From contig FLMG01000600.1 of NCBI GenBank assembly GCA_900088475.1, positions 3,388 to 67,387 on the forward strand: a stretch of 64,000 nucleotides of DNA, given 5' to 3'. Made by a program: the position numbers and the translations under genes. This stretch comes from Hyphochytrium catenoides (lineage: Eukaryota > Protista > Hyphochytriomycota). The notes beneath the pieces were generated by a model. It did not search any database. It saw nothing but the letters and a program-made list of their open reading frames with translations, and had not been told where the DNA came from. Each line of letters opens with the position of its first letter. Positions within the stretch are counted from its first letter, which is position 1. Shown here piece after piece: positions 28,601 to 50,100 of the stretch.

Positions 28601-28852
28601 GATTTTATGGAAGCTTTTATCGCACGCGAAGTGGGTCGGGTAGAATATTTGAAGAGCCGTCAATCGGGAAAGACCGACCACGCGCCTCCCTTGGCTATAG
28701 ACAACAGAGAGCAAGTGGGTGGTCAAGAAAATAGTGGCACCACTCAGGAAGCTCTTCGTTTCAAGACTGATGAAGCATTAGAGGCTGAGTACCAAGAGTT
28801 GGAAGCACAGTTCCGACAGCAGTTCTCGGGAACGAATAAACAACAGCTATGA
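25642..28852 (+). CDS. DNAI3: Axonemal inner-arm dynein intermediate chain IC140/WDR63 (WD40); multi-exon
   Basis: N-terminal PFKLFPKSEIMEEIQKIGFYSDF, MEEALQQNETLDPF, ELRTFTDLVYSKNK..IDWHP, VLVWNFRDLIHPQFVLESP, IAGGSSTGQVVLWD, SHRRPVADIAWLP, FFCGTEEGELVYADW, SVGDWSFNLWKEG, WSPTRPSVL..DVWDLADQSHKP and LAVGDANGNLHILDLPRNL. Confidence 0.88.
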
Positions 28853-29115: not shown

Positions 29116-32100
29116 CTAGGATTGTAAGGCAGCCACCCGCCACTTACTATTGATGCAAATGGCAAGTTGCGATGTGGTGAAACGAAGCTCACCCTCCTCG
29201 ATACAGGAGTCTCCTGCGGTAACAGCGAGATTTACCGGGAAGACAGCGCCAACAACGTTCACAGAACCTTGAAGCCTTACTGAGCCTTCAAAGATTGCTG
29301 CACCGTCTACCCCCAAAGTTGTCGTTTCGATTGTGACCGAGGTCGTTGCAGAGAGACTTATGGTGGAAGATTCCAGTGCGACCCTGTTGCTGTCTAAGCT
29401 CATCACTTCCGAGGCGGATGTTCCCGAGTAACCCAGAATAGATCCAGTGCTCCCACCATCTCCGCTGCGTAGAATCACATTTCCTCCACTCGCGGTGCCC
29501 TCACCTGCCACGATGTTGACTGAGCCACCAGCAGACGAGTCTGAGGCTCCACCGATAATCTCTATGGATCCGCCAGGAGACGAGCCGGATGTACCCACAG
29601 AGAGCGTAATCTTACCAGCTGTGCCGGTTGCTGGCGAGGTAGCAAGGAAAAGGTTTCCACTTACGGTTGACAGCCTGCCAGTTGAAAGAGAAATGCTTCC
29701 GTCGGTTCCCGACAGAGCCATTTTCGCCGCTAGCTCCGTGGGGGTCGCGCCAGACGTTATCGTTACACTGCCATGGGTTGTGCTACCAAGCCCAGCGGTG
29801 ATGGCAATTGCTCCGCCCAGAGTCCCTCCTGCTCCTCCTGATAACATCACATCACCACCTTCTGATGATGCAGAACTGCCACCTACGAGTGTAATCTTTC
29901 CGGCCATGGATGACGCTTCGCCAGCGGCAATGGTCACGTTGCCTGAGGCCGAACCAGAACCGGTCGTCAGAGACATGGATCCACTAGTTGCTGCTGCAGA
30001 ACCTGTTGAGAACGTAATGGAACCCCCTGACGATGCAGAGTCGGGCGTGGAGATCATTACGGCCCCAGCGGCTCCAGAATCGCTACTACCTGATATGAGG
30101 GTAAGCAATCCTCCAGTAAGTGTGGTCGCGGCTCCGGCTTGGATGCGGATTTCACCACCCCGGGCTCCATCGCCACCTTTTACAGTCAGGGCTCCGCCCT
30201 CAGAACCTAATGCGGAAGTGCTACCTGCCTCTAACTCTAGGCTGCTGCCCGCGCTCGTTCCGCTGAGACCTACACTTACGGAAATGGTGCCTGCCGAGGT
30301 TGACCCTGTTCCCGTTGTCAGGGTTATCTGGCCCGACGATGCGCCCGAACTACTACCTGTGTTCAGATTCACATTGCCGGAAGCACCATCGCTGTTTCCA
30401 GTCCTGACAGCAACCTTTCCACTTGTGCCTGCTAAGTTGTTTGCTGACTTCACACTGACATCACCGCTGCCAGACCCTGATCCACCTTGGCCTGATATGA
30501 GGCCAAGCGAACCGCCACCCAGGATACCTGCTCCACCACTGACTTCTACTCCTCCGCCGAAGGCAGCGCTAGAACCACCAGCTGAGAGAGCTATTGCTCC
30601 CCCATTGGCTCCAGCGTTGCCAACACTAAGGAGAATGGAACCAGCACTTGTGCTTGAAGAACCAGTACGCAGACGAACAGACCCTGACGTGCCGGTCCCT
30701 GCGGAACTTCCGGTGGACAGCTCAATGGTTCCGCTCGTGCTATTGACTGCTGGTGGGGTTTGAATATTTACGGCTCCTGATTGGGCGCCGCTGCTGCCAC
30801 CAGAACTCACCGTCACACTTCCTCCGTTGGCGCCAAACCCGTTTCCTGCAACTAAACTAAGAAGACCACCAGCTTGAGCCATACTGGTCCCAAAAGCACT
30901 TCCACCACTGATAAATACGGATCCTGGTGCTTCAAGGTTGTCGGAAGTCCTACCACCTGTGAGGAAAATGTTCCCTCCTCCTCCATTCGTGCCTGTGCCA
31001 CCGCTCAATACGATACTTCCCGCATCTCCTCCAACCGCATTACCGGTGGAAAGATGTATTGATCCAGTAGATCCACCAGTGGACGACCCAGAAGCCATTT
31101 TCAAGAACCCCGTTGAGATCGAAGTTGCCGTAGAGGTCAATATATTGCCGCTTTGAAGCCCTCCAGCCCCAGCCTCCAGAATCACGTTTCCTCCAGTCCC
31201 CACTGGGGCGGACGCCGAGCTAAGTCTTATGTGTCCGGATTGCCCGGTTCCCGTGTGCGCACCTGCAAGAAGGCTGACGTCTCCTGAGATACTAGAAGCT
31301 GTTCCTGAGGAAATGGTGACGGCACCTGACGCTGCACCAAGGGATCCAGAATGCACTGCAACAGTTCCAGTATTTCCTGAAGTTGCCGCGTCGCCAGACT
31401 GGAGTCTTACGCCTCCAGTGACGATTTGGCCGCCACCTCCTTCAATAAGTATACCTCCTCCATTGCCCACTGATGCTCCCGCACGCAGAGTTATAGATCC
31501 ACTCATAGCGCCAGCACTGCTGCCGGCACTAATGGTAATATGTCCACTCACACCATCACTAGCGGCCCCACTTTCAAGATTCACAGCCCCTGAGCCCATT
31601 GATCCAACCCCAGATTTAATGTTAACGCCGCCCGTGTTGTCGGATTGCCCAGAGGAGACTAGAACAGACCCGCTGTATCCGCCACCCAGCTGACTGATGC
31701 CTGATGTAAGCCTAAGAGTTCCCCCAGTAGCCTGCTGGCCTGTACCGGCAGTCAACGCAAGCTCTCCACCTTCGTCTCCTCCTCCTGCTTGCAACAGTAG
31801 CTCGCCGCCCGCACTCAATGAGCTCGGACCAACACTTAAGGTTATTGAGCCAGCCGAAGAGGCGGCTCCCGACCCGATTACCAGTGAGCCTGAAGTACCA
31901 TCTTGCACCGCAGGACTACCAATAACTATAGCACCACTGACCGTACTGCCAAAGCCGCTGGATAGTAGCAAGGAGCCACCAGTGGCGGCTGTTCCAGCTG
32001 GCAGGGTGATAGATCCTCCTGCAGCACCCGCGCTAAGTTCCAGTTCACCGCTTGTGAGCCCATCACCTGCCTCCAGGTGAATGCTCCCAGCTACACCGGC

Positions 32101-35100
32101 AGCAGCATCGCCAGTCCTAAGAGATATAGAACCCGTATTTCCCGCAATAGAAGATCCTGAAGAGAGCACCATAGATCCACTGTTCCCAGCAGGGCCCGTG
32201 TCCGCCGTGGAGATAATAGTTGCTCCGCTTCCGGCTGAGCCGGCACCGCTCTGAAGGTTGACGTGACCTCCTAGACCTGGAGATCCTAGTCCGCCATTGA
32301 TTGTCACTCTGCCTCCCTCGTATCCGACACCAGCCTCAAAGGACAGGGGGCCGCCGTACGACGAAACAGGCGCTGGAGCTCCTGTGCCATCTTGCAGAGA
32401 GTTACCACCAAAGATGCTCACGCCAGCACCGTCGCCGGTGGCACTATAGCCGGCACTCATCGTTATCTGACCTGCGCTTCCCTGTGTGTAGGCATCGCCA
32501 GTTGCGATAAGGACGTTTCCGGTGTTGCCGACATTCGACTTCATCCTTGTCCTGATCGTTACGTGCCCAGTGCGCCCAGGTTCATCAGCCGAACCGCTTA
32601 GAAGATTGATATTACCCCCATTGCTACCAGCGCCGCCATCAACTTTAACATCACCACCACTGCCACCACTGCTCATACCCCCGTATAATCGTAGCTCCCC
32701 ACCGGTTGCGGAACCAATTCCAGATGACAACATGATATACCCTCCCACTCCGCTCTGGGACAGTCCCGCAGAAATTTCCACATGGCCTCCATGGCTCCCA
32801 TCACCTACCGATAGTTGAATAGTTCCAGCTTTGGCAGTTGCCGACTTTCCAGTTGCAAGTGACACGTCGCCGCTCGCTAGGTTGGGAGTGAAGCTTTGTC
32901 CCGTCAGCAGCTCGATAGACCCGCTCATGCCCCATGCTCCTCCATCAGCAGTGAGAAGGCTAATCATGCCGCTAGAGGTGGCACTTCCAGCTCCACTCAG
33001 AAGATGAACGGAGCCTCCTGTCGCTACATTGGATTGACCTCCTGCGATTTCTACTGATCCTCCACTCCCTCCAAAGAAGCTTGAGCTTGAGCCGCCCACA
33101 AGTGAGACCTCTCCGCCAACACCATTGAGCTCCCGACTTGCGTTGCCTGCAGCTAGAGATACGGACCCACTCAGGCTGTCCTTGCTACCACCAGCCTGCA
33201 GAAGAATGCTCCCGCCCTCACCCCACACCGAAGACCCAGAGGACACAATCACTGAGCCGGCATCAGAGGCAATAGAGTCACCAGTGCTTACAGTAAGCTC
33301 TCCACTAGTGCCAGATGAGCCACCTTCTGGGGTTCCAAGAGAGATGCTACCACTGCTGCCTGTCACACTTGATCCGCTCCTAATGGTTATCGTGCCTCCG
33401 CTGAAGCTGTCTTCCCCTGGACCTTTTGCAGCAGAGTCTCCAGCAGAAATAAGGATATGACCTCCACCGTAGCTACCCACTCCAGCATCCAATGTAATGT
33501 TACCAGTGGTTGAGTTGGACAATCCAGTTCCCAGTAGTATATTGCCAGACCCTCCCTTGACCCCTCCAATCCCGGTCTTTATCTCAATAAAACCAGATCC
33601 TCCCAGCGGAGCCCCGTTCGCGGTATTAATGGCAACATTCCCACTTTCACCACTATTAGCAGATCCACCACTTCCACTCGTTATCGAGATTGATCCCCCA
33701 CTTGAGCCTTCAGATGCGCTTCCTGCGACCAATCTCAAGTCCCCGCCAAAGGACCCAGAACCGGCATAAGCAAAGATTGATCCCCCTTTACCAGTGGCAC
33801 CAATGTTGTTACTAGCGAGAAGCTCGATGGGGTTTGCCTCCATGGATGAGTGGCTGTCTCCCATACCGAGTGCTATCCCTCCAGCCCTGCCCTCATTGCT
33901 GGAGCCCGTATATACGGAGATGCCCCCCGTATCTCCCCTAAGGGATGCCCCACTTGATAGTGACACCAACCCACTATCTCCTGAGCTAGCAAAACCAGTT
34001 CCAAGCGACACACTGCCGGAAACACTGCCAGTCCCACTTCTGAGCCCAAGCGTTCCTCCTTGGTCTTTAGCGGAGCCAGCTTCAAGCATGATCGATCCAC
34101 CGGGGGAGGAGTCAGTGGACCCGATACCACTAGTCCCAGCGGTAATCGCAATAGAGCCTCCTTGACCATGGGCTCTGGTGCCTTGAGAAGACCCCGCCGC
34201 AATTGAAACAGAACCACCCCGAGCCTGACCACTTAGCCCTGCGGACAAAACGATGTCTCCACCAGCTCTCTGAAGACTCCCACCGGCAGAAATGTTGAGA
34301 GCCCCTGCCGAATGCCTTATCGTTGACCCGGTCGCAACCGTCAGAGAACCACTACTCTGGTCACTATTACCAGTGACCATAGCTAAATGTCCGCTATTTG
34401 TGCCCAACCCGCTTTTGTTTGCGGTTCCTGTTTGAACCAATATAGCTCCGGAACCACTATGCGGCTCAGCATTTGAAGCCAATCCCGAGACCAGGGTGAT
34501 ATCCCCCCCTTTTTCAGTGCTGTTGCCGCCGCGCAGCTGAAGGCTTCCACCTCGCCCAGAGTACGGGTCGGAGGCGGACCCTGCANNNNNNNNNNNNNNN
34601 NNNNNNNNNNNNNNNNNNNNNNNNNNNNNATAATTGAAATGGAACCAGAAACGCCTCCAGACTTAGAATGGCCCGTCGCAATGGCAATATTTCCACTATC
34701 TCCCATATCCGAAGGACCGGTAGATAGCATCATAGCTCCGGAGGTTTTACTGTTTTCGGTATCTTGTGTCGACATTAGAATTGATCCACCGCCAGCTGCT
34801 CGGAGTTGCACATCACCACCCTGCCACATCTCAGAACCTGCTGAACTTATACGAACGGATCCACCACGATGCTTTCCACTACCGGAAGCTAAAGTGACGT
34901 CGCCACCAAGTCCTGTGGCAGAAGTGCCTGCAGACATCATGACATGACCTGCGACACCATCATAGGAATCGACTCCTCCCCCGGTACCAAACTCAGTACT
35001 CTTACCGGCTGTAAAGGCAATGTCACCAGCCTTCCCGCCGGCAGAGGCGTCCCCTGTGATGAGCGAGAGGTCACCGGTCCTTGATGCCCCATCAGAGAAC

Positions 35101-38100
35101 TCTTTGTCCCTTCCACCGCCTGTTTCGAGCTTTATGGATCCGCTCATGCCTCCGCGCTTGGGGTTTGCTGTTAACATATGAATGATTCCACTAACTGACG
35201 TCCGTCCTCCTCCACCGCTGTGAATTCCTATAGAGCCACCTTGAGACTGCTGGGAGCTACCAGCAGTGATGTCAACAAAGCCGCCACTACCACCACTTCT
35301 GCTGAAGCTAGATCCGGCGGTCAAAGAGACAGCGCCACCATGTCCGTTGAAGTCCTTGGTAGTGTTACCACCTGCGATGTCAATTGAACCACCTGAACCT
35401 TCCCTGCTCAGACCAGCTCCAAGGAGAACACCGCCAGCTTGACCATAACCGGATGTTCCCGAGTTGAGCTTAATGGAGCCTGACATCGACCCTAAGGCGT
35501 CGCCGGTACTGAGAACTAGATGACCTGTGCGGCTTTGTAGCGATGTCAAGGATTCATTCTGAGCTGCAGCGGTTCCAAGATAGAGCTCTCCACTATTTCC
35601 ACTAAGGCTTGACCCAGTTTTAAGTGATACACTGCCACCGGCGAAGTGCTCACTGCCGAGCTCATCTCCAATGGAGGCACCTGCCTCCACAAGTACTTGT
35701 CCTCCTCCTCCGCCTGCAGACCCTGCGCGGACAGTAATACCCCCACTGAGACTATGTGAAGATCCTGTAAGTATGCTCACTTCTCCCGAGGAGAGCTTGC
35801 CACCAGAGCCGGTTGAGAGATTTATACTTCCCGACCCTGCCCCATAAGGCGACCGGTTGTTTGCACTCAAGAGAAGCACATCCCCGCTGCTATCCTTTTG
35901 GCTTCCACCACTTTTGATGGATACTTGCCCTCCCTTTGACAATGATGTTGAACTAGTGCCTGCGGAGATCTCAAGACTCCCACCTTGGTTGCCGTCCCCG
36001 GCTCTTGCCAGCAGGAACCCACCCCTGCCTCCACTGATGTCTCCTGCGGACAGCTCAATAGAACCAGCTGCATTACCGTCTGCGTCTTCGCCAACGGCCT
36101 GACTCTTCCCCACGGCGAGCGTAATCGTGCCAGCCCTTGCTCCGACACTAGTACCAGTAGACATGACGATGCTGCCGGAAAAAGCGTTAGATGAGGAACC
36201 AGTTCTTATGCTTATTGACCCGGAATTGTCTGCCGAGGGAGCGGATTCAAGAGAGGCATTTCCGGATTGCCGTCCCATGCCGCTCTTGACTTCGACGGCA
36301 CCACCAAGATCCGCTGAGGATGATCCGGCCCTCAGGGTTAACCTACCACCTGACGCGCCAAAACGGCTCATAGTATTACCGGCTTTGATAGCAACGGACC
36401 CACCATGGCCACCATTAACCGAGTCTCCCCCGGAGAGAGTCACCCCGCCCCCAGTCTTCTCGTCGCTGCTACCACCCACCATAGTCAGATTGCCGGCTGC
36501 GGCTCTAACACTTGATCCGGTAGTCAGCCGGATCGTCCCACTTTGACTTTCAGCGTCACCACTTCCGATGGAAATTGCACCTGAAGACAATTTCTGACTA
36601 TGACCGGTGTTGAGGACTATTGATCCAGAGCCGAGAAGGTTACGTAAGTCTTCGCCGATCTCAGGGGTAGGGGACGAAGGAGTTACAATCCCCACATGAC
36701 CGCTTTCGTGCCGGGCTGACCTCCCGCTTTCAATCTTGACGTTACCACCGCTACTTCCATGGCTGTTTCCAGCTTGAAGCACAGTATCGCCTCCTTTCCC
36801 TGACATCTCGTTACTGGCGCTTCCAGCTAATAATTTCAGCCCTCCTCCTGATGCTTCTTTACCGGTCATTGAGCCACTTTGCATAATGATGTCACTGCCC
36901 AACCCTTCTACTCCTTGTCCCGCCACCACAGAGATGCTTCCTCCCGCCTGGCTCTTAGAAGCACCACTCAACAGATCCAATGTGGAACCACTGCCCTTCG
37001 AAATTGCATCTCCAGCCTTAATTCGAATTCCCGCTTCACTATTCTCGACAATACTTCCGCTAGAAGCCATAGTTTCAATGTCAATGCGCCCACTACCCTG
37101 TGCACCGGATGCGGCTTGCAAATAGATGTTGCCTCCCACACCGACCATAGGCCCCGCAGAGCCACTGCTGATGCGGACATCTCCTCCTCTTGCTTCTGAG
37201 CTATTTCCAGCTCTAAGCAGAATATTTCCACCCCTATTGTCGCCTGCTTCCACAGACACATCGCCATAACTCGATTTCATGTGGATATCTCCACCCTTGC
37301 CGGACGGCAGATTTTGGTAGCCCATACCGTCACCAAGTACCCCGGCTTCGATCGTTATGCTACCTGCAAGAGCAGGACCTTTCTCGATACCTCCTGTCTG
37401 AAGTGCCAGCGACCCCGAGGCCCGCTGGCTCTTTCCAGAGGCCAGAATGACATCCCCGCTCACGTCTGCCTCGCCAGATCGCAGGGCCAGTGAACCGGAT
37501 CTCGCCTCTCTTGAAGAACCAGTTCCGAGATGCAAATAGCCAGAAGTTCCAAGTCGAGTATTGCCAGAGTGCAAGGTTACATTACCGCTNNNNNNNNNNN
37601 NNNNNNNNNNNNNNNNNNNNNNNNCGCCCGCCACTTATCGAAATCGCGCCACCATTTGAGTTAGCAGAGGAGCCACCAGTGAGCGCTACTCCTCCAGCTG
37701 TAAGTGAGGAACTTATAGCATTTGCTCCACTGAGCTTGATAGAGCCTCCGCGGACTGCTCCTACACCAGACCGGATGGTCACGTTTCCTCCATTTCCGTC
37801 CAACGACTCTCCAGAAGAGATGCTTACGTCTCCACTTGAGCCATAAGACGCAGAACCAGAGAAAATGCGGATATCACCAGAGTTACCGGACGCGCTGTGG
37901 TTTCCTGATCCCACTGATACATCACCACTGCTTCCTTTATAGGACGAGGACAAGCTATTCCCACTCTGTAGTAAAATTGCTCCTCCATCACCTTCGGTCG
38001 CTGAGCCTGCTGAAAGCAAGACATGACCCCCGTTTGAAGAAGCCATAGAGGACCTCGTAGATCCAGCCTGAATGACGATCCCACCGGCTGGGGAAGGATT

Positions 38101-41100
38101 GTTGTCAGACGTCGTTGAGCCAGCAGCTAAACTAATGGCACCGGCTAAGCCGTCCGTATTGTGACCCCCAATCAATGAAATACCGCCGGCGCTTCCTCCT
38201 GTCCCTGTCGATAAGCTAATGGATCCCGATGACTCTTGGCCCATTCCAGAGGCAATGGATAGGCTGCCAGAGGAACCTCTCTCCGAATGTGAGCTCAAGA
38301 GGGAAATATCTCCAGTGGTACCGCCTGGAGCAGCAGAATGACCACTGTACAATGAGACAGTCCCCGAAGAACCTTTTAGATTCCGGCCAGTGAATAACTG
38401 AAGTGCGCCTGTGTGGTCCCCATTGTCGGTCGCAGCGGTGTGAATCTGAACTGTGCCAAGGTCGCCTTCTCCGCTCCTTACCACCACAGACCCACCAAGG
38501 GCTCTATTCGCCGAGGAACCTGCAGCTATTATGACCTTCCCTCCTTTGCCCTCTCCATGACCTGTAAATGACCCTGCCCGCAAATCAATGGAGCCGCCTT
38601 CACTATCACTAGCATTCATGGAACCAGCGTGGAGCCTAATCCCCCCTCCTTGCCCTCGGGTTCCACTTCCAACCTTAAGACTAATTGAACCTGAGGAGGC
38701 ATCGGTGGAATGACCCGTCATGAGGTCTAAAGCGCCAGTTTGCTCGAGGGAGCCAGCCGAAGCTAATGCTATACTACCACTGCCTAGTGGCGTAGCAGGC
38801 CAAGCAGCAGTTGTTAAAATCGATATGTCACCCGTGCGCGATGAACGAGAGGCACCACTACGCAAAGTGAGCTCCCCACCTACGCCGGCCACACTTGAGC
38901 CTGCCTGAATGTCAAGACTTCCTCCAGTCTGGGACGTAGAGGATCCAGCTGAGATGGAAACTGACCCCGCACTGCCTTTCATCATAGAGCTACCCGCAGC
39001 AAGCTCTAAAGAACCAGCTTCACTGGCAGAGCTACCCGAAGAAATAGTTATCGATCCACTTGTGCCATCTTCTCCCAAGACTTCTCCAGAAGAAACACTG
39101 ATGCTGCCACTTTGTCCGGCTGCCGCAGCTCCTGAGGTCAAGTTTAAACTACCAGTCGAAGACATTCCTTCGCTAGAACTTATCATGACCTCTCCACTTG
39201 AGCCTTGTTTGCTTGACCCAGACGACACTATCACACTACCTCCGTTCCCAGTCCCTAAGGAGGATCCGCCTCCCAGAACAACATCACCACCTGAAGCGGA
39301 GGGTGCGAGTGCTGCGCCTCCAGTTAGCGAGATGGCACCAGCTGAATCATTCTCGAAGCTGCTGGTAGGTGGAGATGAACCAATTGACCCCGCTTCCAGC
39401 AGAATGCTGCCTGATAGGCCTCCCTTTGCAGTTCCTACGCTGACGCTGTAGGATCCTGTTTCAAAGCCGTCACCGGTGGAAATGGAGACAGCTCCCGACG
39501 CACCCTCTTTGCTGGATCCGGTGTACATCAACACAGAACCTGACATTCCATCAGCCGTTTGTGCCGTAAGGACGCGCACATCACCAGTCGTCCCAACTGC
39601 TGACGCACCAGTCGACAACGTTATCGCTCCGGAGGAAGAAGTGCTAGTTGCGCCAGTAGAAAGCATTATTTGACCAGTCTCACCTCCTCCAGATGATTTA
39701 GCAGAGCCAAAAAGAATCGAACCAGTCGCCCTCCCTGCGAGCCCAGTACCGCTCTTCAACACAATTGCACCTCCAGTGCTCTGAGTGGCATTTGCTCCCA
39801 AAATTGTTACGTTGCCAGCCCTGGCTGAAGACCCAGCAAGGAGGTCAATAGATCCCCCTAAACTCTCACTTTCATCGGACAACGTATTCGTGGGTATCGA
39901 GCCAGCTGATAACCGGATTGAACCACCTTGGCCTCGATTGCCTTTACCAATTGATATTTCAATGGAACCGGTGCTACCTCCAGAGCTATTTCCGCTATTC
40001 AATTTGATAGAGGCGCTGGCGCCTGCGCTTGACCCTGTCGACAGGCTGACCAGTCCGCTGCGGCCTCCAGCAGGTCCGCTGGCGGCTGAACCAATCCAAA
40101 TGGACCCACTGGCTGAGCCCTGCCCTTGGCTGGCACCGCTTTGTAAGACCAAGTTCCCACCAGTCCTGCCGGCGCCAGTCGTTGAGCCGCCATTTAGAGT
40201 AATAGTTCCTCCATGTCCGTTCAAAGTTGATCCAGCAGTCACATTGACAGCTCCACCATCCGTGCCGTATTCTGGCCCTTGAGCTGATCCAGCCAAGAGC
40301 ATCATTGACCCACCCGAGACTGAGCCGGATCCTGTTCCTACAGCGAGAGTTATTGAACCCCCGGCGCCCCCGAGGCTTTCTCCCGTTGCCAACTGCAGTC
40401 CTCCACTACTAGAAGCTCGCGAAGCACCAGAAGACAATACTACGTTACCACTTGACCCTATGCTACCGTCCTCAGCTTCGCTAGATCCTATCCAAATAGA
40501 TCCACTTCCAGCTAGTCCGGTGCCCGAGAGCAGCCTAAGCTGGCCTCCGACTCCTCCAACGGCCGTGCCACCACGGACCAGAATGCCTCCCGCGCTAGAG
40601 GAGGGATGTGTAGATTGGGAGGAGCCACCGGTGAGTTCTACTTCACCCGCAGTATCCTGTGGGGTATGTGAGGTGATAGAGCCAGCACTGAGACGTAGGC
40701 TGCCAGCCTCTAGCTTGGTGCTGTTACCAGCTATTATCATGACAGAACCAGACTGCAGTGCTTTTCCAGTCGACAGAGCAATTCCCCCTGAGGAGCCGTT
40801 CAGGCTACCTCCAGTGGAGATTAAGCTTGCGCCAGATCTTGCGCCCACTGCTGTGGCCTGTCCTGTAGCCAGAGCTATAGTGCCTGCAGCCATGCGTGCC
40901 ATTCCCGTCTGGACCTTTATGGAGCCAGAAGAGGCGCCTGCCTGATTGGCACCTGTCACAATTTGTACTTCTCCGGTGTCTCCTGCCAGCTCGAGTTCAG
41001 AAGCCGCCGTTCCTATCTGGACAGGACCGCTCTTCAGATCAGGACTTGAGCCACTCACAAGGGTGATAGCACCCCCGGGACCATTTCGGGCATCCCCTCC

Positions 41101-44100
41101 CTGAAGTAAAATGCTACCTCCCTGGCCCTCCAATTGGGCTTTACCACCACGGAGCTCGATGGAGCCACCTCCTACAGTGGAGGACTTCAATGCTCCTGTT
41201 GACCCAGCGGTAATCGTCACCTTTCCTCCGCCACCTTGGCCACTTTTTCCTGCTTCTATTAGCACTTGTCCTGCGTTTGCTACTTCCGAATCACCTGATC
41301 GCAGTGAAAGGGATCCGCTGCTTCCTGCTCCAGTTGGCGAACCGGGTCGTGCTGTGGAGGAGGTTTGGATCGTCACATTTCCGCTTTGACCATTGCCTTT
41401 TGCTATGCCAGATGCGACAGTGACCTGTCCACTGTTGTCGGCATCAAATTGCCCCTCGGCATCTCCGCTCACTAGCCTAAGATCGCCACCTCGCCTACCG
41501 GATCCTGACCCTAAAACAAGAGCTCCACCTTGCCCATTTGAAGCTCTACCTGCGCGAACAGAAACAGAACCCCCCTGGCCATTGGATTGAAAGTTATCAC
41601 TCGTGCTTCCCCCATCAATAAGAACGGATCCACCACCAAGGGCCCCTATTCCTGCTGATAAGGTGAGCGATCCTGCATGGCCACTGCTACTCCTACCGGT
41701 TGCAAGACTAAGATGCCCAGAACCAACTCCTGCCTGTCCAGAAAGGAGAGTTATGTTACCACTGCGACCTTGGCTATTGTCAGTATCTCCAGAGCTTAAG
41801 CGGACGCTACCGCTTCCACTAAGAGAGGATCTACCAGAATTGATGGCGATGTCACCGCCGCGTCCAGCGCCAGCGCTTCCACCAGTCAAGAAAATACTCC
41901 CTCCCTGCGAAGACTCCTTAGTAGACAAAGCAGAGCCTGCATTGAGGTCTATTTCCCCTCCCACAGCCCTTTCCAGACCGGACCCTGCGGAAATTTGAAT
42001 CCGGCCACCGGTCCTCTCTCCGCCATGACCTGCCTGGATTTCGACTGACCCTGCCACTCGTCCAGCGTTACCGGTTGAAAGCGTTAGCGATCCCGAGGAG
42101 GCGGTCGATGGAGAAGCCGCTCCCGTGGCGAATACAACTGAGCCAGTTTGAGCGCCTTCTTTAGCAAAAACGCTAGATGTTGAGAGTTTGACCTCACCAC
42201 TCAACCTGTCCGCGGATCCACTATAGATACGGATAGCGCCAGACTTTCCCCCTTCATATGATGCGGAGCCAGAGGACAGTTCGATTGATCCTGAGGCATC
42301 CCCAGAAATGCCACTGCCAATCGTCACAAGCCCACCAGCCTTACCCGCACTAGGGCCACTGAGGATGCTCAAGGAGCCACCTGCTCCATTTAGAGAAGTT
42401 CCTCTGCCCGCGTGGAAGCTAACATTACCACCGGAAGTGCCTCCGCCCCCTTCCAATATAACACTGCCACCAGAAATTGCAGCGTCTCCAGCGACAAGGC
42501 GCACGGAACCTCCGTTGCCTGCATATCCAGTGCCGGCTTGAAAGCCTAGTGATCCTCCCTCTCCCAAAGTGCTACTACCAGCTTTAAGTAGAAGGTACCC
42601 TCCAGTGGAGGTGTTGGTAGAAGAAGACTCTATAGAAATGTTGCCACCAATTCCATGGGACGAGCCCGAAAGAATAGCAATGGATCCGCCGTCCCCTGCA
42701 CGAGAGGCACCACTTTGAATTGTCACGTAGCCTCCACTCGCAGACTCGCTATCGCCTCCCTGGAGCGTCAGCTCTCCTCCACCCTTAGAACTAGACTTTC
42801 CTGCTGCCAAGAACAAAGAACCTCCATTGCCATCCCTGCTTGGCCCAGCCAAAACTGAAAGAGTTCCCGCTTCCTGTGGCCCCGAGGACCCAGTTGCAAT
42901 AAGGACTGATCCGCTTCGGCCAGAGTGGCTGTCACCAGTTATAAGCTGTAGTGCTCCGCTTTGAGAGTTGGCTTTACCGGAAAACAGTGACACCGCTCCG
43001 GTCTTGCCATCGCTGTTATCTGAGTGATGTGATCCGATTTCAACACCGCCACTATTCCCAGATGTGGAGTTGCCAGAATTGAGGATAACATCCCCTCCTG
43101 AGCCACCAGAGCTAAGACCTGCCTCAAGTTTGATATTTCCTCCCTTTGAACCTGCGAGGTTGGATGAACTGTGCCCACCCTCTATTATTACGTCACCACC
43201 CGCAACCGGACCGCTCGCTTCCTGTGATGAGACTTGAGAAGCCCCTGCCGAAAAGTGAATCGACGAACCCTTATTCCCGTTGCTCGCCCCAACGACGGCG
43301 CTGATTGACCCCGAATGAACGCCATCACCCGTACGCATGTTCAAAGAACCAGACAACCCTCGAGGAGTGTTTCCACTGACGAGTGAGATCGAACCGGACA
43401 GGGCTCCCGATCTGACATTCTCAAGCACGTCAGAGGTAGAAATGTAAACGCTACCGCTTATGCCACTTTGAGAGTTGCCGGAAAGGAGATGTAGGGATCC
43501 CGAAGTCCCAGAAGATGTACCGCCACTGCTAATTGTAAGATTCCCAGAAGTTGCCCCAGAATTCATTGCGTCAGAAGTGATAATCTGGACAGAACCACTA
43601 AGGGTGCTGGAAGGGCCTGATGTTAATAGAAGATGGCCATCAGCTCCCGCTGAGAATGTCGCGTTGGCCCCATCCGACGATAGGCCCTCCAAGCCAATAT
43701 AGGCCCCATTGCGATCGTTGTTAACCGTGGGGTGAGCGGAGCCCGCTGATATTCTGACAGCACCCGATTCCCCAACCCCTGAAGTATCACCCACGGTGAT
43801 CTCGATGTCCCCAGTCCGTCCACTGGAACTTCGCCCAGACTTTAGTGATAGCGAGCCGCTATCGGCCTTGCCAGTTGATCGGGATGAAAGCGATATGTTT
43901 CCGGATGATCCCTCGGCGCCGACCACACCTGACCATATCTGCACATTCCCGCTACTGCTCTCTCCAGTGCCACTATACAGTTCAAGATTCCCTCCAATGC
44001 CAGACATACTCTCTCCAGCTTCCAGACTCAATCTGCCACCAGAGCCATCCAAAGTGTTGCCCGAGTTCAGAAGAATAGATCCACCTTCACCCTTCGTCAC

Positions 44101-47100
44101 CGACCCACCCACCAACCTCACAAGGGCACCTTCCCCTGGCCCGCTAGCTGACCCAGCAGACAGAGTGATACTACCACTTTGCTCTCCCGCTAAACTGTTA
44201 CCAGTTGTCAGCCAAACGTGCCCACTTCCTCCATCGCTTGATGATCCAGTTTCCATAGAGAGGTCACCACTATCGCTTCCTTTGCCTGGAGTGTTTGTAG
44301 CTACCTGAATCGATCCACTTGCACCAGCGGCACTTGTACCTGAAAGGAGGCTAATGGTTCCTCCGGACCCAAAGGCTGAAGAAGTTTGTCCTGCTAGAAT
44401 CCGTATGCTACCGCCTTCACCCGAAGTCGCAGCGCCACTGCTGCCTGCCCGGATAACAATGTCACCACCTTTGGCAATAGGAGACCCAACTGTTTCCGCA
44501 GAGCCTGCGAAAAGCCCTATGTTGCCTCCCTCAACCTCACGACTCCGCCCGACTGCAAAAGACATCAAGCCAGCCTTGACTCCGTCGCCTGTTGACAGAC
44601 TAATCACCCCTGAAGACCCACTGGGACTGTAGCCCGTCGAAAAGTGAACACCACCGGAGTTTGATTCCGGCCCCAGCACCATGGAGGTGGATGCAATGAT
44701 ATCGCCACTCTCTCCGTAGGTCGCTCCACCGGTCTGAAGTGTAACCGAACCGGACTTCGACGCCCTACCAGGACCGCCTTCGGTAGGTCCGCTAGTTAAT
44801 TCGACCGAGCCGCTTCCACTCTTACCTTCACCTGATTCTAGATGCAGCGTGCCACTTCTAGCCTCTGCCCCAACTCCAGTGCGGATTGTAACTGAACCCC
44901 CATTCTCACCGTCTGCAGACCCACCCCCGATGTCAATCGTACCTCCAATCTCATTATTGCCGCCAAAACCGGCCCTAAGCCGAATGGAGCCGCCAGGTGA
45001 TCTCTCCTTGGCTTTGGTAGAGCCAGCCTCAACAGTCACAGAACCACCCTGACCCAACATGCTGCTTCCTACTTGAAGGGCAATATTTCCTCCTCTTCCC
45101 GCGGAACTAGAGCCGGAGGTCAGAGACAATTGTCCCGTGCTGTCAGGGGAGTTGGCAGTCTTGATTGAAACATCACCGCTGTGGCGAAAGCCTGAGGAAC
45201 CTTGAGATGTTCCTGAAGATATTAAAACAAATCCTCCAGTGCTATCACTCCCCAAAGCATCTCCAGCAGCAAAGTATGCAGCCCCTCCCCGCTTGCTCCC
45301 GTAACCTGCAGCGAGGTTGAGGGATCCGCCGGCACTTACAGCTGAGGAGCCTGAGGAAAGCGATATCGTTCCACCATCAGCCTCATTTACTAGGCCCGCA
45401 TGTACTTCTATGGATCCACCGTGAGATACACCTTGGCCTGTTGACAGTTGAATCGAACCTGAGTGTCCGCCGGCTGATATTCCACTAGCGACAACGACAG
45501 CACCAGTAGAATGACTCCTGGCTTTGCCAGAGGCAATGACTAAAGATCCGCTTGATCCTCCTGCCCCTCCGGACGTAAGTTTAACACGACCACTTGTTCC
45601 TTTTAGGCTGCTTCCCGACGAAAGTGAGAGCTCACCGCCTATCCCTGCGCTTGCTTCACCAGCAGCAACAATAATCCTGCCGCCATCTAAGGCACTGTTC
45701 GTAGACGTTGAAGTGGATCCGCTCTGTAGAATTAGATCGCCTCCTTTCCCGTTGCCGCTATTCGACTCAGCTCTAGCCACAGATCCAGCAGCGATATGCA
45801 CCTTACCCGCCGACGCATCTAGCGAGCTATTTCCAACAGTGAGCGTAATAGAACCAGGTACTTCTGCTTCTCCCGTCGATAAGCTTATAAAGCCAGAAGA
45901 ACCATAAGGACTGACTCCTGTGGCGAGAATCGCTGAACCAGACCGGGACTGAGTGCCAGGGCTAGAGGTAGCCGTCTCAGCCGTACTGATAATGACTGTT
46001 CCACTCACTGAGGATGACCGACCAGTGCTCAACGCTATTGATCCCGAGGTACCGACAGCACTATCGCCAGAGTAAAGCTCTATGTTACCGGTGCCTTCGG
46101 CCTGGGGGTCGACAGCATTTGCAGTAGAAATGCTTACCAGGCCAGTCTTTGTCTTGATTCCCTCGCTACCGCCGCTACGAAGCTGAATGCTGCCGCCAGA
46201 GCCGTCGACGCCTTGCCCTGCTGCTACGGTTAGGTTACCACCCATCCCGCTGCCTGTCTTCATAACAGAACCAGACTGTAACTCAATAGAGCCCCCAACT
46301 GCATTCCTGCTTGTGATGTGGCCCGCATGCAGGCGAATCTTCCCTCCTACACTGTTGCCACCATCATGGACCTTAATAGTAACAGATCCCGCGGACCCGT
46401 GGCCACTGCTCCCGGTCTCAAATGAGAGCGCTCCAGAATTTCCCTCGTCCGTTGGAGAGGAGTACATCTTTATGTTGCCGCTGGCACCTTTTTGTCCAGT
46501 TAGTCCCGACGCGATGGTAAAGTCGCCACTGCCATACCCCTCCTGAGTTCCTCCAGACTGAATTGAAATTGCGCCACCTGTGCTGGACCTACTGCCGCCT
46601 GCGGAAACATCTATCTTGCCACCAACCCCATACTCTGAGGATCCTGACAATAGTGAGATTGGACCACCTTCTCCCTTTTCGGATTGTTTCGTTAGAGACC
46701 CAGCCGTGATGTTTACAGCTCCTCCAAGTGAGTTAACACCCGATCCTGAGGACAGACTGATCGATCCGCTTTTTCCAGCGTGGCTGTTACCTGTAGAGAC
46801 CGCAATATTGCCCGACTCTCCGGTGGAGGATTCCCCCGAAGAAATGGCCACGCGACCGCTAGATCCTTGTAGCTTTGAAGAACCAGAAGCAATAACGACA
46901 GAACCACTGTCCCCCTTGACAGCAGAGCCAGAAAAGAGCATGAGGTGGCCGGCTACTCCTTTAGAGGCGTGTCCTCCCTGGAGCATGACATGCCCTCCGT
47001 CAGAGGATAGATCATTGCCCACTGTATTACTAGATCCACCTTGCAAAGTAACCTTGCCTGCCTCTCGGGTACCGACCGGTCTTGACGACGATCCATCGAC

Positions 47101-50100
47101 AGACCCCGCCCTGAGATGGATACCCCCCGACTCTGCCTCACTACTATTGCCTGTGCTAAGCCAGATCGAGCCAGAATTTACCAGCCCGGTGCCGGTAGAA
47201 AGTGAAACAGATCCACTGGACTCATTTAAGGCCTCTCCTGTGACAACGGAGAAGGATCCGGAGGGAACCCCTTGTCTTCCTTTATTCGCCCCGGTCATGA
47301 GCATTAGGTCTCCGCTACCGCTTTCGGATTGTCCGGTGGAAATGCTGACTCCGCCTGATCCTACGTTGGTACTACTACTTGTATAAATCTCAACAGAGGC
47401 ATGGCTCTGTTGACGGGAGGTGCTCTCAATGCCGCCTGTTGAAGTGCCCAGACGCACTGATCCGGCTGCCCCGAAACGCCCTGCGCCGCTCTCAATCTCA
47501 ACAGAGCCACCCTCCCCGTGACCCATACTCATACCGGCAGCAATCCTTACATCGCCCCCTTCAGCCTCGCCGGAACCCGCATGAAGATCAAGAGCTCCAC
47601 CGACGGAACTCGCGCCAGAAGACGAGCCCGAGCGCAGACCAATGTCACCTGCGGCACCAGTGCTGTTTCCCGAGCCAATCGCAATGGCACCCCCATGTGC
47701 GCCTTTTGAGGATCCTGTTGTCAAGAAGAGAGAGCCGGTCCGTCCATCGCCGGAAGATGTAGAGATTGAAACGTTACCGGAGCCCCCACCATCGTTCTCA
47801 GTGATTCCACCAGATCCAGAGCTTATGAACACTGATCCGCTGGTCCGACTCCTAGAGCTACCGCTTCGCATCAAGAGCTCTCCTCCTCGCCCTGTCACAC
47901 TAGTACCTGCATCTATCTCCAAAGAACCACCGTGGCCTGAGACAGATGCACCTGCCTTCACTTGAATCCGACCTCCTACGCCAGTAGGGTAAGCTCCCAG
48001 GGCAGAACCTGCAGTGAGCTGGATCTTTCCTGCAGGTAGAGGTCCAGCAATCGACCCAGCCGACAGGTTGACGCTACCACTGGTACCATCTTGAGCTGAT
48101 CCGGTCAAAAGTGTAATACTGCCGGTATTGCCAGTGGCCTTCGATACACCTGACTCTATCTGAACATTTCCAGAGGAAGCCCCGCTGGTGGCTCCAGATT
48201 TTAGACGTAGTCCTCCAGTTGAACCTGTACCAGCTGCAGATGCCACAAGAATGTCACCACCGATGCCGGTGCCGAAGGCTCCCCCACTTCTTAGAACAAG
48301 GTGACCTCCCTTCGATTGGCGCTCGCCATTCAAAGTGGAGTAGGAGTGTCCAGCGTCTAAAATGAGAGAGCCTGCGTCGGATTCGCTTCCAGACTCTACA
48401 GAACCAGCAGACACAGAAATAGTGCCGCCTTGGTGAACGGTGCTATTACCTGCCGTCACAGAAATTGAACCTGCAGTCTTAGCTGCCGAACCGCTTGTGA
48501 GCCTTAGCGATCCTGTAGAGCCCTTTGAAGTTCCTGCTGTTCCCAGCACAGCAGCACCAGAACTTCCCAAACCAGAGACAGCGGATGAGGAGAGAACGAT
48601 ATCTCCACTATTTGCTGCAGCAACACCTGTTTCAATTCGAATGCTCCCAGAGCTTAATGCTCTTGAGGCGCCAGTTGCAATAAGGGTCGATCCACTGGCC
48701 CCGCTTTGCACAGCGGCTGTTGTGAGGGTGAGCTGACCACTCCCTTGCGGCCCACTTCCAGTAATCAGATCTATGGGACCACCCTCACCGTACGCTGCAG
48801 CTGTCCCTCCAATCAGACTTAATGACCCTCCCTCCAGCGCTCCATCTCCTGCCGAAATCTGTACCGCTCCTCCTTCACCCTGCAGGTTTGAACCTGCGGC
48901 CAAGGAAATTAGACCCGCCGAAATCCCATTGCTTTTGCCAGCAGTAAGTCGAATGTCGCCACTCGAGCCTGCAGAGCTGTTTCCTGACGTCAACAGGAGA
49001 TGGCCACTGTCAACACCAGCATTATTAGACATCAGAGCAACAGCACCACTGAAAGTCCCCTCCTGAGAAGACGTCTGCCCAGAAGATATTGAAACAGAAC
49101 CGCTGCTTCTCGAGGTGGCTGACGTGCCTCCACTTTGAATGTGAAGGCTACCTCCATCTCCGCCATTTTCTGAGGCAGAGCCGGCCTCAAGACTAAGAGA
49201 GCCACCTGTCCCCGAGTAGGAGGATCCTGATTGCAGGTGCAGTAATCCGCCAGTCCCACCTTTATCACCCTCCACGGAGCCAGCACCAATAACCACATTC
49301 CCTCCTTGTTTGGAGCCATGCCCGAGTCCACCAAATAGGCTGAGTGCACCAGCTTCTTGGCCACTCAACCCTGAAGAAATTTTAACTTCACCACTCTTCA
49401 CTCCTTGAGCCTTGCCTGTCGATAGGGTAATGCTCCCGCTTAGCCCTTCAGGTCCTTCTGCTACGTCAGTAGCGAGGAGAAGGGAGCCACTTCGTCCCTT
49501 GGAGGATCTGCCCGATAGAACTCTCACATATCCGCCGGTACCCTCTGCAAAACCTCCAGAGAGGACTACACCACCTCCATCAATAAAACTGGAGCCAGCA
49601 ACCAATACCGCATCACCCCCTTGCCCCTTGGCTGAACCTGCTTTCAGGACGAGGTTCCCGCCGGTCTCTTCCAAGCTTTCTCCAACAACCACAGAGACAG
49701 ATCCAGCAGCGGAAGCATTACCGGTAGACAGCATGAGTGAACCGGACGAACCAGCCTGGGCATGGCCAGTTTGCAACTTTGCGTACCCAGTTGCCTCCCT
49801 AACAGCGCCAATCGAGTCGATAATAGCCGACGTGCTTAGGCTAAGGCTGCCAGTTTGAGTTTGACCCCGACCTGTTGCAATCCGAACTGCTCCTGAAGAA
49901 ATACTCTCACTATTTCCACTCAGCAGCTCGAGAGCACCAGTTCTGCCAATGCCACTGTCGCTGCTGCTTATATGTACTGATCCACTGTTTCCGCGCTTGA
50001 ACGCACTGCCGCTGGAGATTGTTACCGAACCACCGAGACCCTGATCACCAGACGAGCCGGCATAGATTGTGACATTACCTCCGATTCCTCCATTAACCCC

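What the first reader, a model, noticed from the sequence alone, without database searches (positions are those of the whole stretch)
29116..29400. C-terminal tip of the giant protein resembles a phage spike or tail-fibre trimerisation end
Seen: the Gly-rich repeat gives way to tighter strands (SSTISLSATTSVTIETTTLGVDGAAIFEGSVRLQGSVNVVG), then a small Cys-containing module (TAGDSCIEEGELRFTTSQLAICINSKWRVAAL). There is no transmembrane helix or GPI signal. Established: short-period strand repeats taper the triple beta-helix of P2 gpV, Mu gp45 and VgrG spikes. A G..C...G.(I/L).(F/W)....L.(V/I)C....W motif occurs in phage tail-fibre and shufflon PilV-type tip modules. Inference: the eukaryotic protein is a homotrimer nucleated at its C-terminus and may derive from a phage or bacterial fibre gene.
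Basis: partly seen in the sequence, partly recalled or inferred. Interest (0 to 1): 0.75.

Follow-up and report, generated by a model that had tools for sequence, protein, structure and literature searches.

The report
Phage-type end cap on giant fibre
A giant repeat protein of a stramenopile protist ends in a small two-cysteine piece that is probably a diverged copy of an uncatalogued end-piece found on the tail fibres and spikes of very many bacterial viruses, which points to a viral or bacterial origin for the ends of this eukaryotic fibre family.

Summary
An ORF of at least 11,586 residues, broken only by three assembly gaps, leaves its 15-residue Gly/Ser repeat about 105 residues before the stop at 29116-29118. 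It ends ...GDSCIEEGELRFTTSQLAICINSKWRVAALQS, which holds the only two cysteines of the whole visible protein.

The tip itself has no significant match in Pfam, PHROGs, NCBIfam, PDB, 50,697 phage records or 1.84 billion representative proteins. A homologous fibre ORF of the oomycete Lagenidium giganteum ends at the same place with ...SACTKGTFNYDSTYIYLCTATNTWMRVALTAHV. That is a clear copy of a roughly 40-residue module found at the extreme C-terminus of:
- phage tail fibres, tailspikes and depolymerases (157 GenBank phages);
- at least 539 IMG/VR contigs;
- at least 120 bacterial genome contigs.

No Pfam or NCBIfam family covers this module. Our tip aligns to it in register (G, C, W, R, AL; W lies 7 residues before the stop against 8 in most carriers), but only weakly (targeted p about 0.0005-0.05).

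Modelled on an alignment of the module's carriers, the tip comes out as a three-stranded beta-meander, not a triple beta-helix taper. Trimerisation is inferred, not shown. The link to PilV is weak. Earlier notes of this scan describe sister fibre genes in the same genome; none that I saw mentions this module.

The parts
29116..29118 (-). Stop codon of the giant ORF
   Evidence: Unchanged in contigs of two DNA samples.
29119..29241 (-). C-terminal module, last 41 residues (FPVNLAVTAGDSCIEEGELRFTTSQLAICINSKWRVAALQS). It is a probable diverged copy of the phage/prophage fibre C-terminal module.
   Evidence: In-register alignment to the module HMMs and by hhalign. MAFFT alignment A4 keeps C58 and W63 invariant across 52 sequences. 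AF2 gives pLDDT 76-91 with strands at model residues 48-50, 54-59 and 62-67.
29203..29205 (-). Cys 1 (residue 11,558). It sits next to the position where two-Cys phage and bacterial variants and Lagenidium carry their first Cys.
29155..29157 (-). Cys 2 (residue 11,574). It aligns with the nearly invariant Cys of the module (YxYvC).
29140..29142 (-). Trp 11,579, seven residues before the stop. It aligns with the module's invariant Trp.
   Evidence: The Trp lies 7-10 residues before the stop in 78 of 80 viral (79 of 80 within 7-12) and 119 of 120 bacterial copies.
29242..29433 (-). Non-repeat, Gly-poor beta-strand linker (SEVMSLDSNRVALESSTISLSATTSVTIETTTLGVDGAAIFEGSVRLQGSVNVVGAV) between the last 15-residue repeat and the module.
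   Evidence: 'TISLSATTS' is shared with Lagenidium 'AISLSASTS'. There is a weak multi-stretch likeness to a bacterial S74 fibre, P0001. The AF2 model is low-confidence here.
29434..64000 (-). Shaft of about 700 copies of the 15-residue Gly/Ser repeat. The ORF runs off the window, so the N-terminus is not seen.
   Evidence: No Pfam domain anywhere in it.
34586..34629 (.). Assembly gap (N run). The others are at 37590-37624 and 57307-57341. These gaps, not introns, cause the apparent frame changes.

Best explanation
The stretch is the true C-terminus of a giant eukaryotic fibre protein: at least 11,586 residues and about 700 copies of a 15-residue Gly/Ser repeat, in a stramenopile nuclear gene.

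The last ~40 residues are most likely a diverged two-cysteine copy of a widespread, uncurated end-module. That module terminates phage and prophage tail fibres, tailspikes and capsule depolymerases. Its consensus is P-x-S-x-T-S-x-(G/C)-x-x-G-x-I-x-(Y/W)-D-x-x-Y-I-Y-V-C-x-A-x-N-T-W-K-R-x-A-L-x-T-W-stop.

Shown here:
- The module family exists.
- It always sits at the extreme C-terminus.
- A bona fide copy ends a homologous oomycete fibre.
- When modelled on an alignment made almost wholly of module carriers, our sequence gives a small three-stranded antiparallel beta-meander with good confidence. This shows compatibility, not membership.

Inferred:
- The two cysteines form a disulfide clasp across the meander.
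- The module works as the terminal cap of a three-chain fibre, setting the register of the chains or sealing their distal end, as the small C-terminal foldon does in T4 fibritin.
- The stramenopile family took its fibre ends (this module and the Peptidase_S74 chaperone seen in relatives) from phage or bacterial fibre genes.
For: Our protein:
- It holds the only two Cys of 11,586 residues, both in the last 29 residues.

The repeat family:
- It includes an oomycete ORF and S74-bearing eukaryotic proteins (E 1e-39 to 5e-15; PF13884 in P0004, P0007 and P0008).

The Lagenidium ORF:
- It ends with its only two Cys at the same place.
- Its last 60 aa hit 157 phage records by tblastn. The best is the S-RIM8 structural protein at E 2e-5. 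The hits are annotated tail fibre, tailspike, depolymerase or structural protein.
- It hits phrog_17312 (tail protein, C-end) at E 2.3e-4 and phrog_21017 at 2e-3.
- It scores 59 bits against a viral-only HMM.

Position of the module:
- It is at the extreme C-terminus in 12 of 12 GenBank phages.
- The same holds in 79 of 80 IMG/VR loci and 119 of 120 bacterial genome loci.
- Two-Cys variants with 'C-x-x-G' exactly as in Lagenidium occur in phages and in 56 of 116 bacterial copies.

Our tip against the module:
- Phage HMM: 3.9 bits, one-target E 0.002, matched or beaten by 114 of 20,000 shuffles, and by 11 of 20,000 when the end register is also required.
- It ranks third among about 1,195 non-module natural ORF ends.
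- hhalign gives P = 0.0013, in the same register.
- MAFFT keeps Cys and Trp invariant.
- The Trp is 7 residues before the stop, against 8 in most carriers.
- Atlas feature search returns the same three viral clusters for our tip (0.86-0.89) as for the Lagenidium tip (0.90-0.92).

Structure:
- AF2 with the module alignment gives pLDDT 76-91 over the module.
- The nearest BFVD models are the phage carriers.
Against: - Our tip has no database-significant match of its own. Pfam, PHROGs, NCBIfam and PDB were blank. tblastn against phages found nothing. The search of 1.84 billion representatives gave only three spurious multi-repeat hits.
- Our tip against Lagenidium pairwise is weak (BLASTP not significant; shuffle p about 0.02).
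- HMMs built from the bacterial set score it lower (1.0 and -0.4 bits; p 0.026-0.05).
- With composition correction switched off, S/T/G-rich windows elsewhere in the protein outscore it.
- The module's most conserved residues (D, Y-x-Y, N-T) are absent, and the Cys-to-Trp spacing is one residue shorter.
- The AF2 model and the BFVD matches are partly circular, because the alignment came from the module carriers.
- No solved structure holds the module, so the fold and any oligomer are unverified. Only monomers could be modelled.
Confidence: 0.62

Rival explanations
1. A lineage-specific disulfide loop whose likeness to the phage module is chance. On this view the window's protein lost or never had the module that Lagenidium carries, and ends in an unrelated small Cys loop.
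For: All direct scores of our tip are weak. The conserved D, Y-x-Y and N-T are missing. Nothing was found in 1.84 billion representatives.
Against: The anchors stay in the same register in four independent alignments. The Trp-to-stop distance matches. It is the same unique two-Cys end as in a homologous protein that carries a bona fide module. The same Atlas clusters come up for both tips. The end-anchored shuffle test gives p about 5e-4.
Confidence: 0.2
2. The module is an adhesive or ligand-binding distal tip rather than a folding or trimerising cap. It would be related to the disulfide loop that precedes the variable tail of the shufflon adhesin PilV and to pilin D-regions.
For: R64 PilV holds '[28 protein letters not shown]'. 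Its local alignment to our last 45 aa beats 4989 of 5000 shuffles and pairs both Cys, the Gly and the Trp. The Atlas shape search lists PilV, minor-pilin and N_methyl clusters at TM 0.55-0.56.
Against: Module HMMs do not detect PilV. tblastn of plasmids finds no PilV. The PilV region was picked by eye. TM 0.56 over about 63 residues means little. The same module ends phage proteins of very different receptor specificity, which argues for a structural role rather than a specific binding role.
Confidence: 0.1
3. The tip is what remains of the segment that precedes a Peptidase_S74 self-cleaving chaperone in relatives. The ORF would stop where the chaperone would begin, so the end equals a mature, already 'cleaved' fibre end.
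For: Relatives carry S74 after a non-repeat segment of similar length, with a similar exit motif (LS[LM][DS]D) and, in one copy, a two-Cys loop.
Against: Profile-profile comparison of tips against pre-S74 segments gives probability 0.5%. The Lagenidium end is plainly the phage C-terminal module, which in phages is never followed by S74 in the loci read.
Confidence: 0.05
4. A tapering triple beta-helix apex like P2 gpV, Mu gp45 or VgrG spikes.
For: Only the short-period strand look of residues 11,495-11,545, plus a weak multi-stretch likeness to a bacterial fibre.
Against: No Pfam, PHROG or PDB match to spike families. No His-x-His metal motif in the tip. Foldseek and VIA found no spike. That stretch is modelled at low confidence.
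Confidence: 0.03

Closest known systems
C-terminal ~40-residue module of phage/prophage tail fibres, tailspikes and depolymerases. Examples: Synechococcus phage S-RIM8/syn9 structural protein; Klebsiella phage UPM2146, RaK2 and K64-1 tail proteins; C-ends of phrog_17312 and phrog_21017. It is not in Pfam or NCBIfam.
   Same: It sits at the extreme C-terminus of a long beta-rich fibre. The Gly, the hydrophobic-x-hydrophobic-Cys, the Trp, the Arg and the Ala-Leu are in the same order. The Trp is 7 residues before the stop, against 8. A two-Cys variant exists in phages and bacteria.
   Different: Our copy lacks the conserved Asp, Tyr-x-Tyr and Asn-Thr. It has one residue fewer between Cys and Trp and one more between the two Cys. 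It ends in QS, not TW. The carrier is a eukaryotic protein of more than 11,000 residues.
C-terminus of the Lagenidium giganteum fibre ORF (L003:1-2277; misjoined in model N0F65_003511)
   Same: Same 15-residue repeat family, the same non-repeat exit ('ISLSA[ST]TS'), and the only two Cys of the ORF lie in the last 35 residues.
   Different: The Lagenidium copy is canonical (59 bits to the viral HMM). Ours is diverged (3-4 bits).
Stramenopile giant fibre proteins with internal Peptidase_S74 (PF13884) chaperones
   Same: Same repeat. Probably secreted, three-chain fibres.
   Different: No S74 domain in the 11,586 residues visible here. This gene ends in the small module instead.
T4 fibritin foldon (27-residue C-terminal trimerisation hairpin). 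The comparison is from my own knowledge.
   Same: A very small beta module at the extreme C-terminus of a phage fibre, ending in hydrophobic-L-S-T-F-type residues after a Trp. It is a plausible functional analogy.
   Different: No sequence hit of the module profile to any PDB chain, although foldon fusions abound there. No fold match.
Shufflon adhesin PilV of IncI1 plasmid R64
   Same: The pattern G-x-S-C-x3-G ... h-x-h-S-C-x4-W-K. Local alignment p about 0.002. Weak shape match.
   Different: The motif is internal, before the variable tail. The carrier is a pilin with a prepilin N-terminus. No HMM or BLAST link.

Membership tests
Phage/prophage fibre C-terminal module (YxYxC...NTWKR...TW-stop) | Lies at the extreme C-terminus, with the Trp 7-10 residues before the stop | tested here: met
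   In ours the Trp is 7 residues before the stop. Carriers: 78 of 80 viral and 119 of 120 bacterial.
Phage/prophage fibre C-terminal module (YxYxC...NTWKR...TW-stop) | Nearly invariant Cys, then Trp after 5 residues, then x-Arg-x-Ala-Leu | tested here: inconclusive
   Cys, Trp, Arg and Ala-Leu are present and aligned, but the Cys-to-Trp spacing is 4, not 5.
Phage/prophage fibre C-terminal module (YxYxC...NTWKR...TW-stop) | G-x-[IFW]-x-[YWF]-D-x-x-Y-x-Y core | tested here: not met
   G-E-L-R-F is present. The Asp and both Tyr are replaced (T, Q, A).
Phage/prophage fibre C-terminal module (YxYxC...NTWKR...TW-stop) | Significant profile match | tested here: inconclusive
   Scores of 3.9, 3.3, 1.0 and -0.4 bits. 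Targeted p from 0.0005 (end-anchored) to 0.05. hhalign P 0.0013, probability 19%. Not significant database-wide.
Phage/prophage fibre C-terminal module (YxYxC...NTWKR...TW-stop) | A homologous protein carries a bona fide copy at the same place | tested here: met
   Lagenidium ORF.
P2 gpV / Mu gp45 / VgrG spike apex | Spike-family domain, tapering triple beta-helix, His-x-His metal site | tested here: not met
   No Pfam, PHROG, PDB or fold match. No His in the last 100 residues.
Peptidase_S74 (intramolecular chaperone) fibre proteins | PF13884 domain with a Ser-Lys dyad following the fibre | tested here: not met
   No PF13884 in any of the five pieces. There is no room downstream. Relatives do have it. 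The N-terminal part outside the window is untested.
Shufflon PilV adhesins | Prepilin N-terminus plus Shufflon_N domain, with the Cys loop before the variable tail | tested here: inconclusive
   The N-terminus is outside the window. NCBIfam and Pfam give no PilV or Shufflon_N hit on the visible part. There is only a pattern and weak shape likeness.
T4 fibritin foldon | Sequence or fold match to the 27-residue foldon | tested here: not met
   The module profile finds no PDB chain at E up to 10. Foldseek and VIA give no foldon match.

The most novel reading that the evidence does not exclude
A single ~40-residue disulfide-clasped beta-meander is a universal, so far unnamed 'fibre end-cap'. It would be shared by thousands of phage and prophage receptor-binding proteins, by the conjugative-pilus adhesin PilV, and by giant extracellular fibres of stramenopile eukaryotes. 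In the eukaryotes it was captured from a phage or bacterium and now terminates filaments of more than 11,000 residues, which could be micrometre-scale. It would be a new minimal trimerisation or registration unit comparable to the foldon.
Probability: 0.2. Interest if true: 0.8.

Novelty: new variant of a known kind. Interest (0 to 1): 0.62.

Why it matters
If the reading holds, it matters for three reasons.

1. It defines a very common phage receptor-binding-protein end-module that no curated family library describes and for which no structure is solved. The module is present on Klebsiella capsule depolymerases, which are being engineered for therapy, so knowing what it does is practical.

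2. Together with the S74 chaperone in sister genes, it gives a second, independent phage-type part in a eukaryotic giant-fibre family. That strengthens the case that stramenopiles built an extracellular fibre system from captured phage or bacterial fibre genes.

3. It offers a tiny, testable candidate for how a chain of more than 11,000 residues is capped or registered.

Tried and rejected
Searches with our own tip that found nothing useful:
- Pfam, PHROGs, NCBIfam and PDB.
- tblastn against phages and plasmids (only noise).
- Word-index protein searches restricted to the tip.
- IMG/VR by peptide patterns.
- JGI metagenomes with the two-sequence alignment.
- The search of 1.84 billion representatives gave three hits. 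All are summed weak matches to repetitive proteins: a bacterial S74 fibre, a cadherin-like protein and a PKD protein.

Other tests that failed or were uninformative:
- Single-sequence AF2 of the last 150 aa was useless (pLDDT 40.6).
- The idea that the tip equals the pre-S74 segment was rejected by hhalign (0.5%).
- The idea of a further exon with a chaperone downstream was rejected. The convergent WD40 gene ends 264 bp away.
- Foldseek against PDB and VIA-wide gave no credible fold match.
- PDB hits of a phage module to antibody heavy chains (YYC...W) are chance.
- A literature search by motif strings and by topic found no description of the module.
A DNA pattern was used instead.
- R64 was not found under AP005147, but was found as NC_005014.
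- Read laying showed only the same organism. The run of 'organism B' holds one identical 179-bp piece and gives no orthologue. No RNA run was on record.
Full report
WHAT IS THERE

The finding lies on the minus strand.

The four long minus-strand ORFs of the region are one reading frame cut by three N runs: 34586-34629, 37590-37624 and 57307-57341. Each piece is stop-free in exactly one frame. The ORF runs off the window at 64000. That gives 11,586 visible residues.

The composition is G 22%, S 19%, A 9.5%, and the period is 15 (7+8). About 620 anchors give the unit (G/S)-G-x-[ILV]-x-[LIV]-x-(S/A/T)-G-x-S-x-x-G-x. No Pfam domain is found anywhere in it.

The repeat stops near residue 11,480, and glycine content drops to 5-12%. 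The only two cysteines of the 11,586 residues are 29 and 13 residues from the end.

The gene sits in ordinary eukaryotic surroundings. A multi-exon WD40 gene converges on it and ends 264 bp away, and a FAM161A/B homologue lies further on. Contigs of two DNA samples of the same organism span the gene end and show no difference within the tip.

THE TIP ON ITS OWN FINDS NOTHING

- Pfam, PHROGs, NCBIfam and PDB by sequence were blank or noise.
- tblastn against 50,697 phage records found nothing at E up to 10. Plasmids gave noise.
- Two word-index protein searches limited to the tip found nothing.
- The HMMER scan of 1.84 billion representatives gave three hits of E 5e-5 to 4e-4. All are sums of weak matches to repetitive proteins.
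- A single-sequence AF2 model was unusable.

THE FAMILY GIVES THE KEY

Searching the last 1,822 residues as a whole found repeat relatives:
- a EukProt protein;
- two TARA Oceans proteins;
- two metaclust proteins;
- a Lagenidium giganteum (oomycete) protein.

Three of them carry Peptidase_S74, the self-cleaving chaperone of phage tail fibres. This agrees with earlier notes of this scan on sister genes of the same genome.

Reading the Lagenidium contig showed that its fibre ORF really stops at L003:2278-2280. The public model splices over that stop into an importin-like gene. The ORF ends ...VTVASACTKGTFNYDSTYIYLCTATNTWMRVALTAHV. Again these are the only two Cys of the ORF, at the same place as in ours.

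Directly, our tip and the Lagenidium tip are only weakly alike. BLASTP was not significant, and shuffle tests gave p of about 0.02-0.03.

THE LAGENIDIUM END IS A PHAGE MODULE

- tblastn of its last 60 residues hit 157 phage records. The best was E 2e-5, 50% identity over 44 residues.
- Almost all hits lie under genes annotated as tail fibre, tailspike, depolymerase, pectate lyase or structural protein. The phages infect Synechococcus, Klebsiella, Cellulophaga, Mycobacterium, Caulobacter and others.
- In all 12 records I opened, the match is the very end of the protein. Two examples are ...TSAGTAGDIRYDADYVYVCVATNTWKRSALATW-stop and ...TSAGVLGQWAADNSYIYVCVANNSWLRAALTTF-stop.
- PHROGs places the Lagenidium end on the C-end of phrog_17312 (tail protein, E 2.3e-4) and of phrog_21017.
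- In 79 of the 80 loci kept, the motif's Trp lies 7-12 residues before the stop, and 8 residues in 66 of them.
- A DNA-pattern scan of bacterial and archaeal genomes also reached its limit at 120 loci across many phyla. In 119 of these the Trp is 7-10 residues before the stop.
- About half of the bacterial copies and several viral ones are two-Cys variants with 'C-x-x-G' exactly as in Lagenidium.
- No Pfam or NCBIfam model covers the module. Among 52 sequences each library gave only one unrelated weak hit, and none to the module.
- No PDB chain matches its profile.
- I found no paper on it.

IS THE WINDOW'S TIP THE SAME MODULE?

In favour:
- An HMM of the 12 GenBank phage copies aligns our tip in the expected register (G-G, C-C, W-W, R, AL). 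The score is 3.9 bits and the one-target E-value is 0.002.
- 114 of 20,000 shuffles reach that score. Only 11 of 20,000 do so if the alignment must also end in register with the C-terminus.
- Among 1,289 natural ORF ends taken from the window and all loci, 94 outscore it. Of those, 92 are true module carriers.
- hhalign gives P = 0.0013 in the same register.
- MAFFT of 52 sequences keeps the Cys and the Trp invariant, ours included.
- A weak BLASTP alignment to the S-RIM8 protein uses the same register.
- The language-model feature search returns the same three viral clusters for our tip (0.86-0.89) and for the Lagenidium tip (0.90-0.92).

Against:
- None of this is significant database-wide.
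- HMMs built from the pattern-selected bacterial set give only 1.0 and -0.4 bits.
- Without composition correction, S/T/G-rich windows elsewhere in the protein score higher.
- The module's Asp, Tyr-x-Tyr and Asn-Thr are replaced.

I put homology at roughly 0.7. It rests mainly on position, register and the bona fide copy in a homologous protein.

FOLD

With alignment A4 (our tip, Lagenidium and 50 viral copies), AF2 gives mean pLDDT 72.8, and 76-91 over the last 35 residues. The model is a three-stranded antiparallel sheet with strands ELR, SQLAIC and SKWRVA. The preceding 'tighter strands' are modelled poorly.

Foldseek against PDB and VIA-align against 48,161 chains give nothing credible. 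In BFVD the nearest models are the phage carriers themselves, at probability 0.9-0.99 and E 0.07-1. That is partly circular.

There is no sign of a tapering triple beta-helix as in gpV, gp45 or VgrG.

PILV

- The Atlas shape search lists PilV, minor-pilin and N_methyl clusters at TM 0.55-0.56.
- R64 PilV holds '[28 protein letters not shown]' just before its shufflon-variable tail.
- That region aligns to our last 45 residues better than 4989 of 5000 shuffles, pairing both Cys, the Gly and the Trp.
- However, the region was chosen by eye, and module HMMs and tblastn find no PilV.
- In PilV the motif is not a terminal tip.

This remains a lead.

MECHANISM

Shown: a terminal module of a phage-type fibre family.

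Inferred:
- The carriers in phages are tailspikes and fibres, which are trimers (established knowledge of Tail_spike_N and pectate-lyase-type depolymerases, and of S74 proteins).
- The same small module ends proteins of very different receptor specificity. A structural role is therefore more likely than specific binding. That role would be capping, or setting the register of three chains at the distal end, with a disulfide clasp in the two-Cys variants.
- The analogy to the T4 foldon is from memory and was not confirmed by any search.
- The rival that the tip equals the segment before an S74 chaperone was tested and not supported.

LIMITS

- The N-terminus is outside the window.
- There is no RNA evidence.
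- Only monomers could be modelled.

Noticed in passing
L003:1-2280 (Lagenidium giganteum NSDO01000391.1): The public gene model N0F65_003511 (P0009) joins the fibre ORF to an importin/transportin-like gene by splicing over the fibre's own stop codon at 2278-2280. The canonical phage-type end module is therefore missing from the annotated protein.
   Followed up: yes
L001:11417 and L001:17153 (TARA scaffold); same in L004: One giant, probably secreted eukaryotic gene carries two Peptidase_S74 starts 5.7 kb apart. The second is interrupted by a short intron right after SDSRIKRDIS. It has a signal-like start, MATRS...LVTW.
   Followed up: partly
window 29854-29992: Two alleles that differ at 7 sites within 139 bp appear in contigs of both DNA samples. 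This is heterozygosity inside the repeat shaft.
   Followed up: no
window 23567-24583 (-) and 27221-28852 (+): A FAM161A/B homologue (a cilium/centrosome protein family) and a multi-exon WD40 gene. The WD40 gene converges on the fibre gene with only 264 bp between the two stops.
   Followed up: partly
L102 (Candidatus Heimdallarchaeota MAG JABCTC010000034.1), 3669-3715: A canonical copy of the module (…TPASATATGTKGDVAWDSDYIYICVATDTWKRTALSTW-stop) on a contig binned as Asgard archaeon. It may be a virus or a binning artefact.
   Followed up: no
L217:29791-31215 (-) (plasmid R64 PilV): PilV holds a two-Cys loop ending in TWK ('GASCSPNG...[10 protein letters not shown]') at the border of the constant part and the shufflon-variable tail. 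It resembles both our tip and the phage module in pattern.
   Followed up: partly
P0001 (3709 aa, bacterial): A Cys-free bacterial fibre of D/T/A/G/N-rich strand repeats that ends in a Peptidase_S74-type chaperone. It was the best, though weak, hit of the Gly-poor linker of our protein.
   Followed up: no
window 34586-34629, 37590-37624, 57307-57341: Three short N runs, not multiples of three, break the giant ORF. The true repeat number and length here are unknown.
   Followed up: yes
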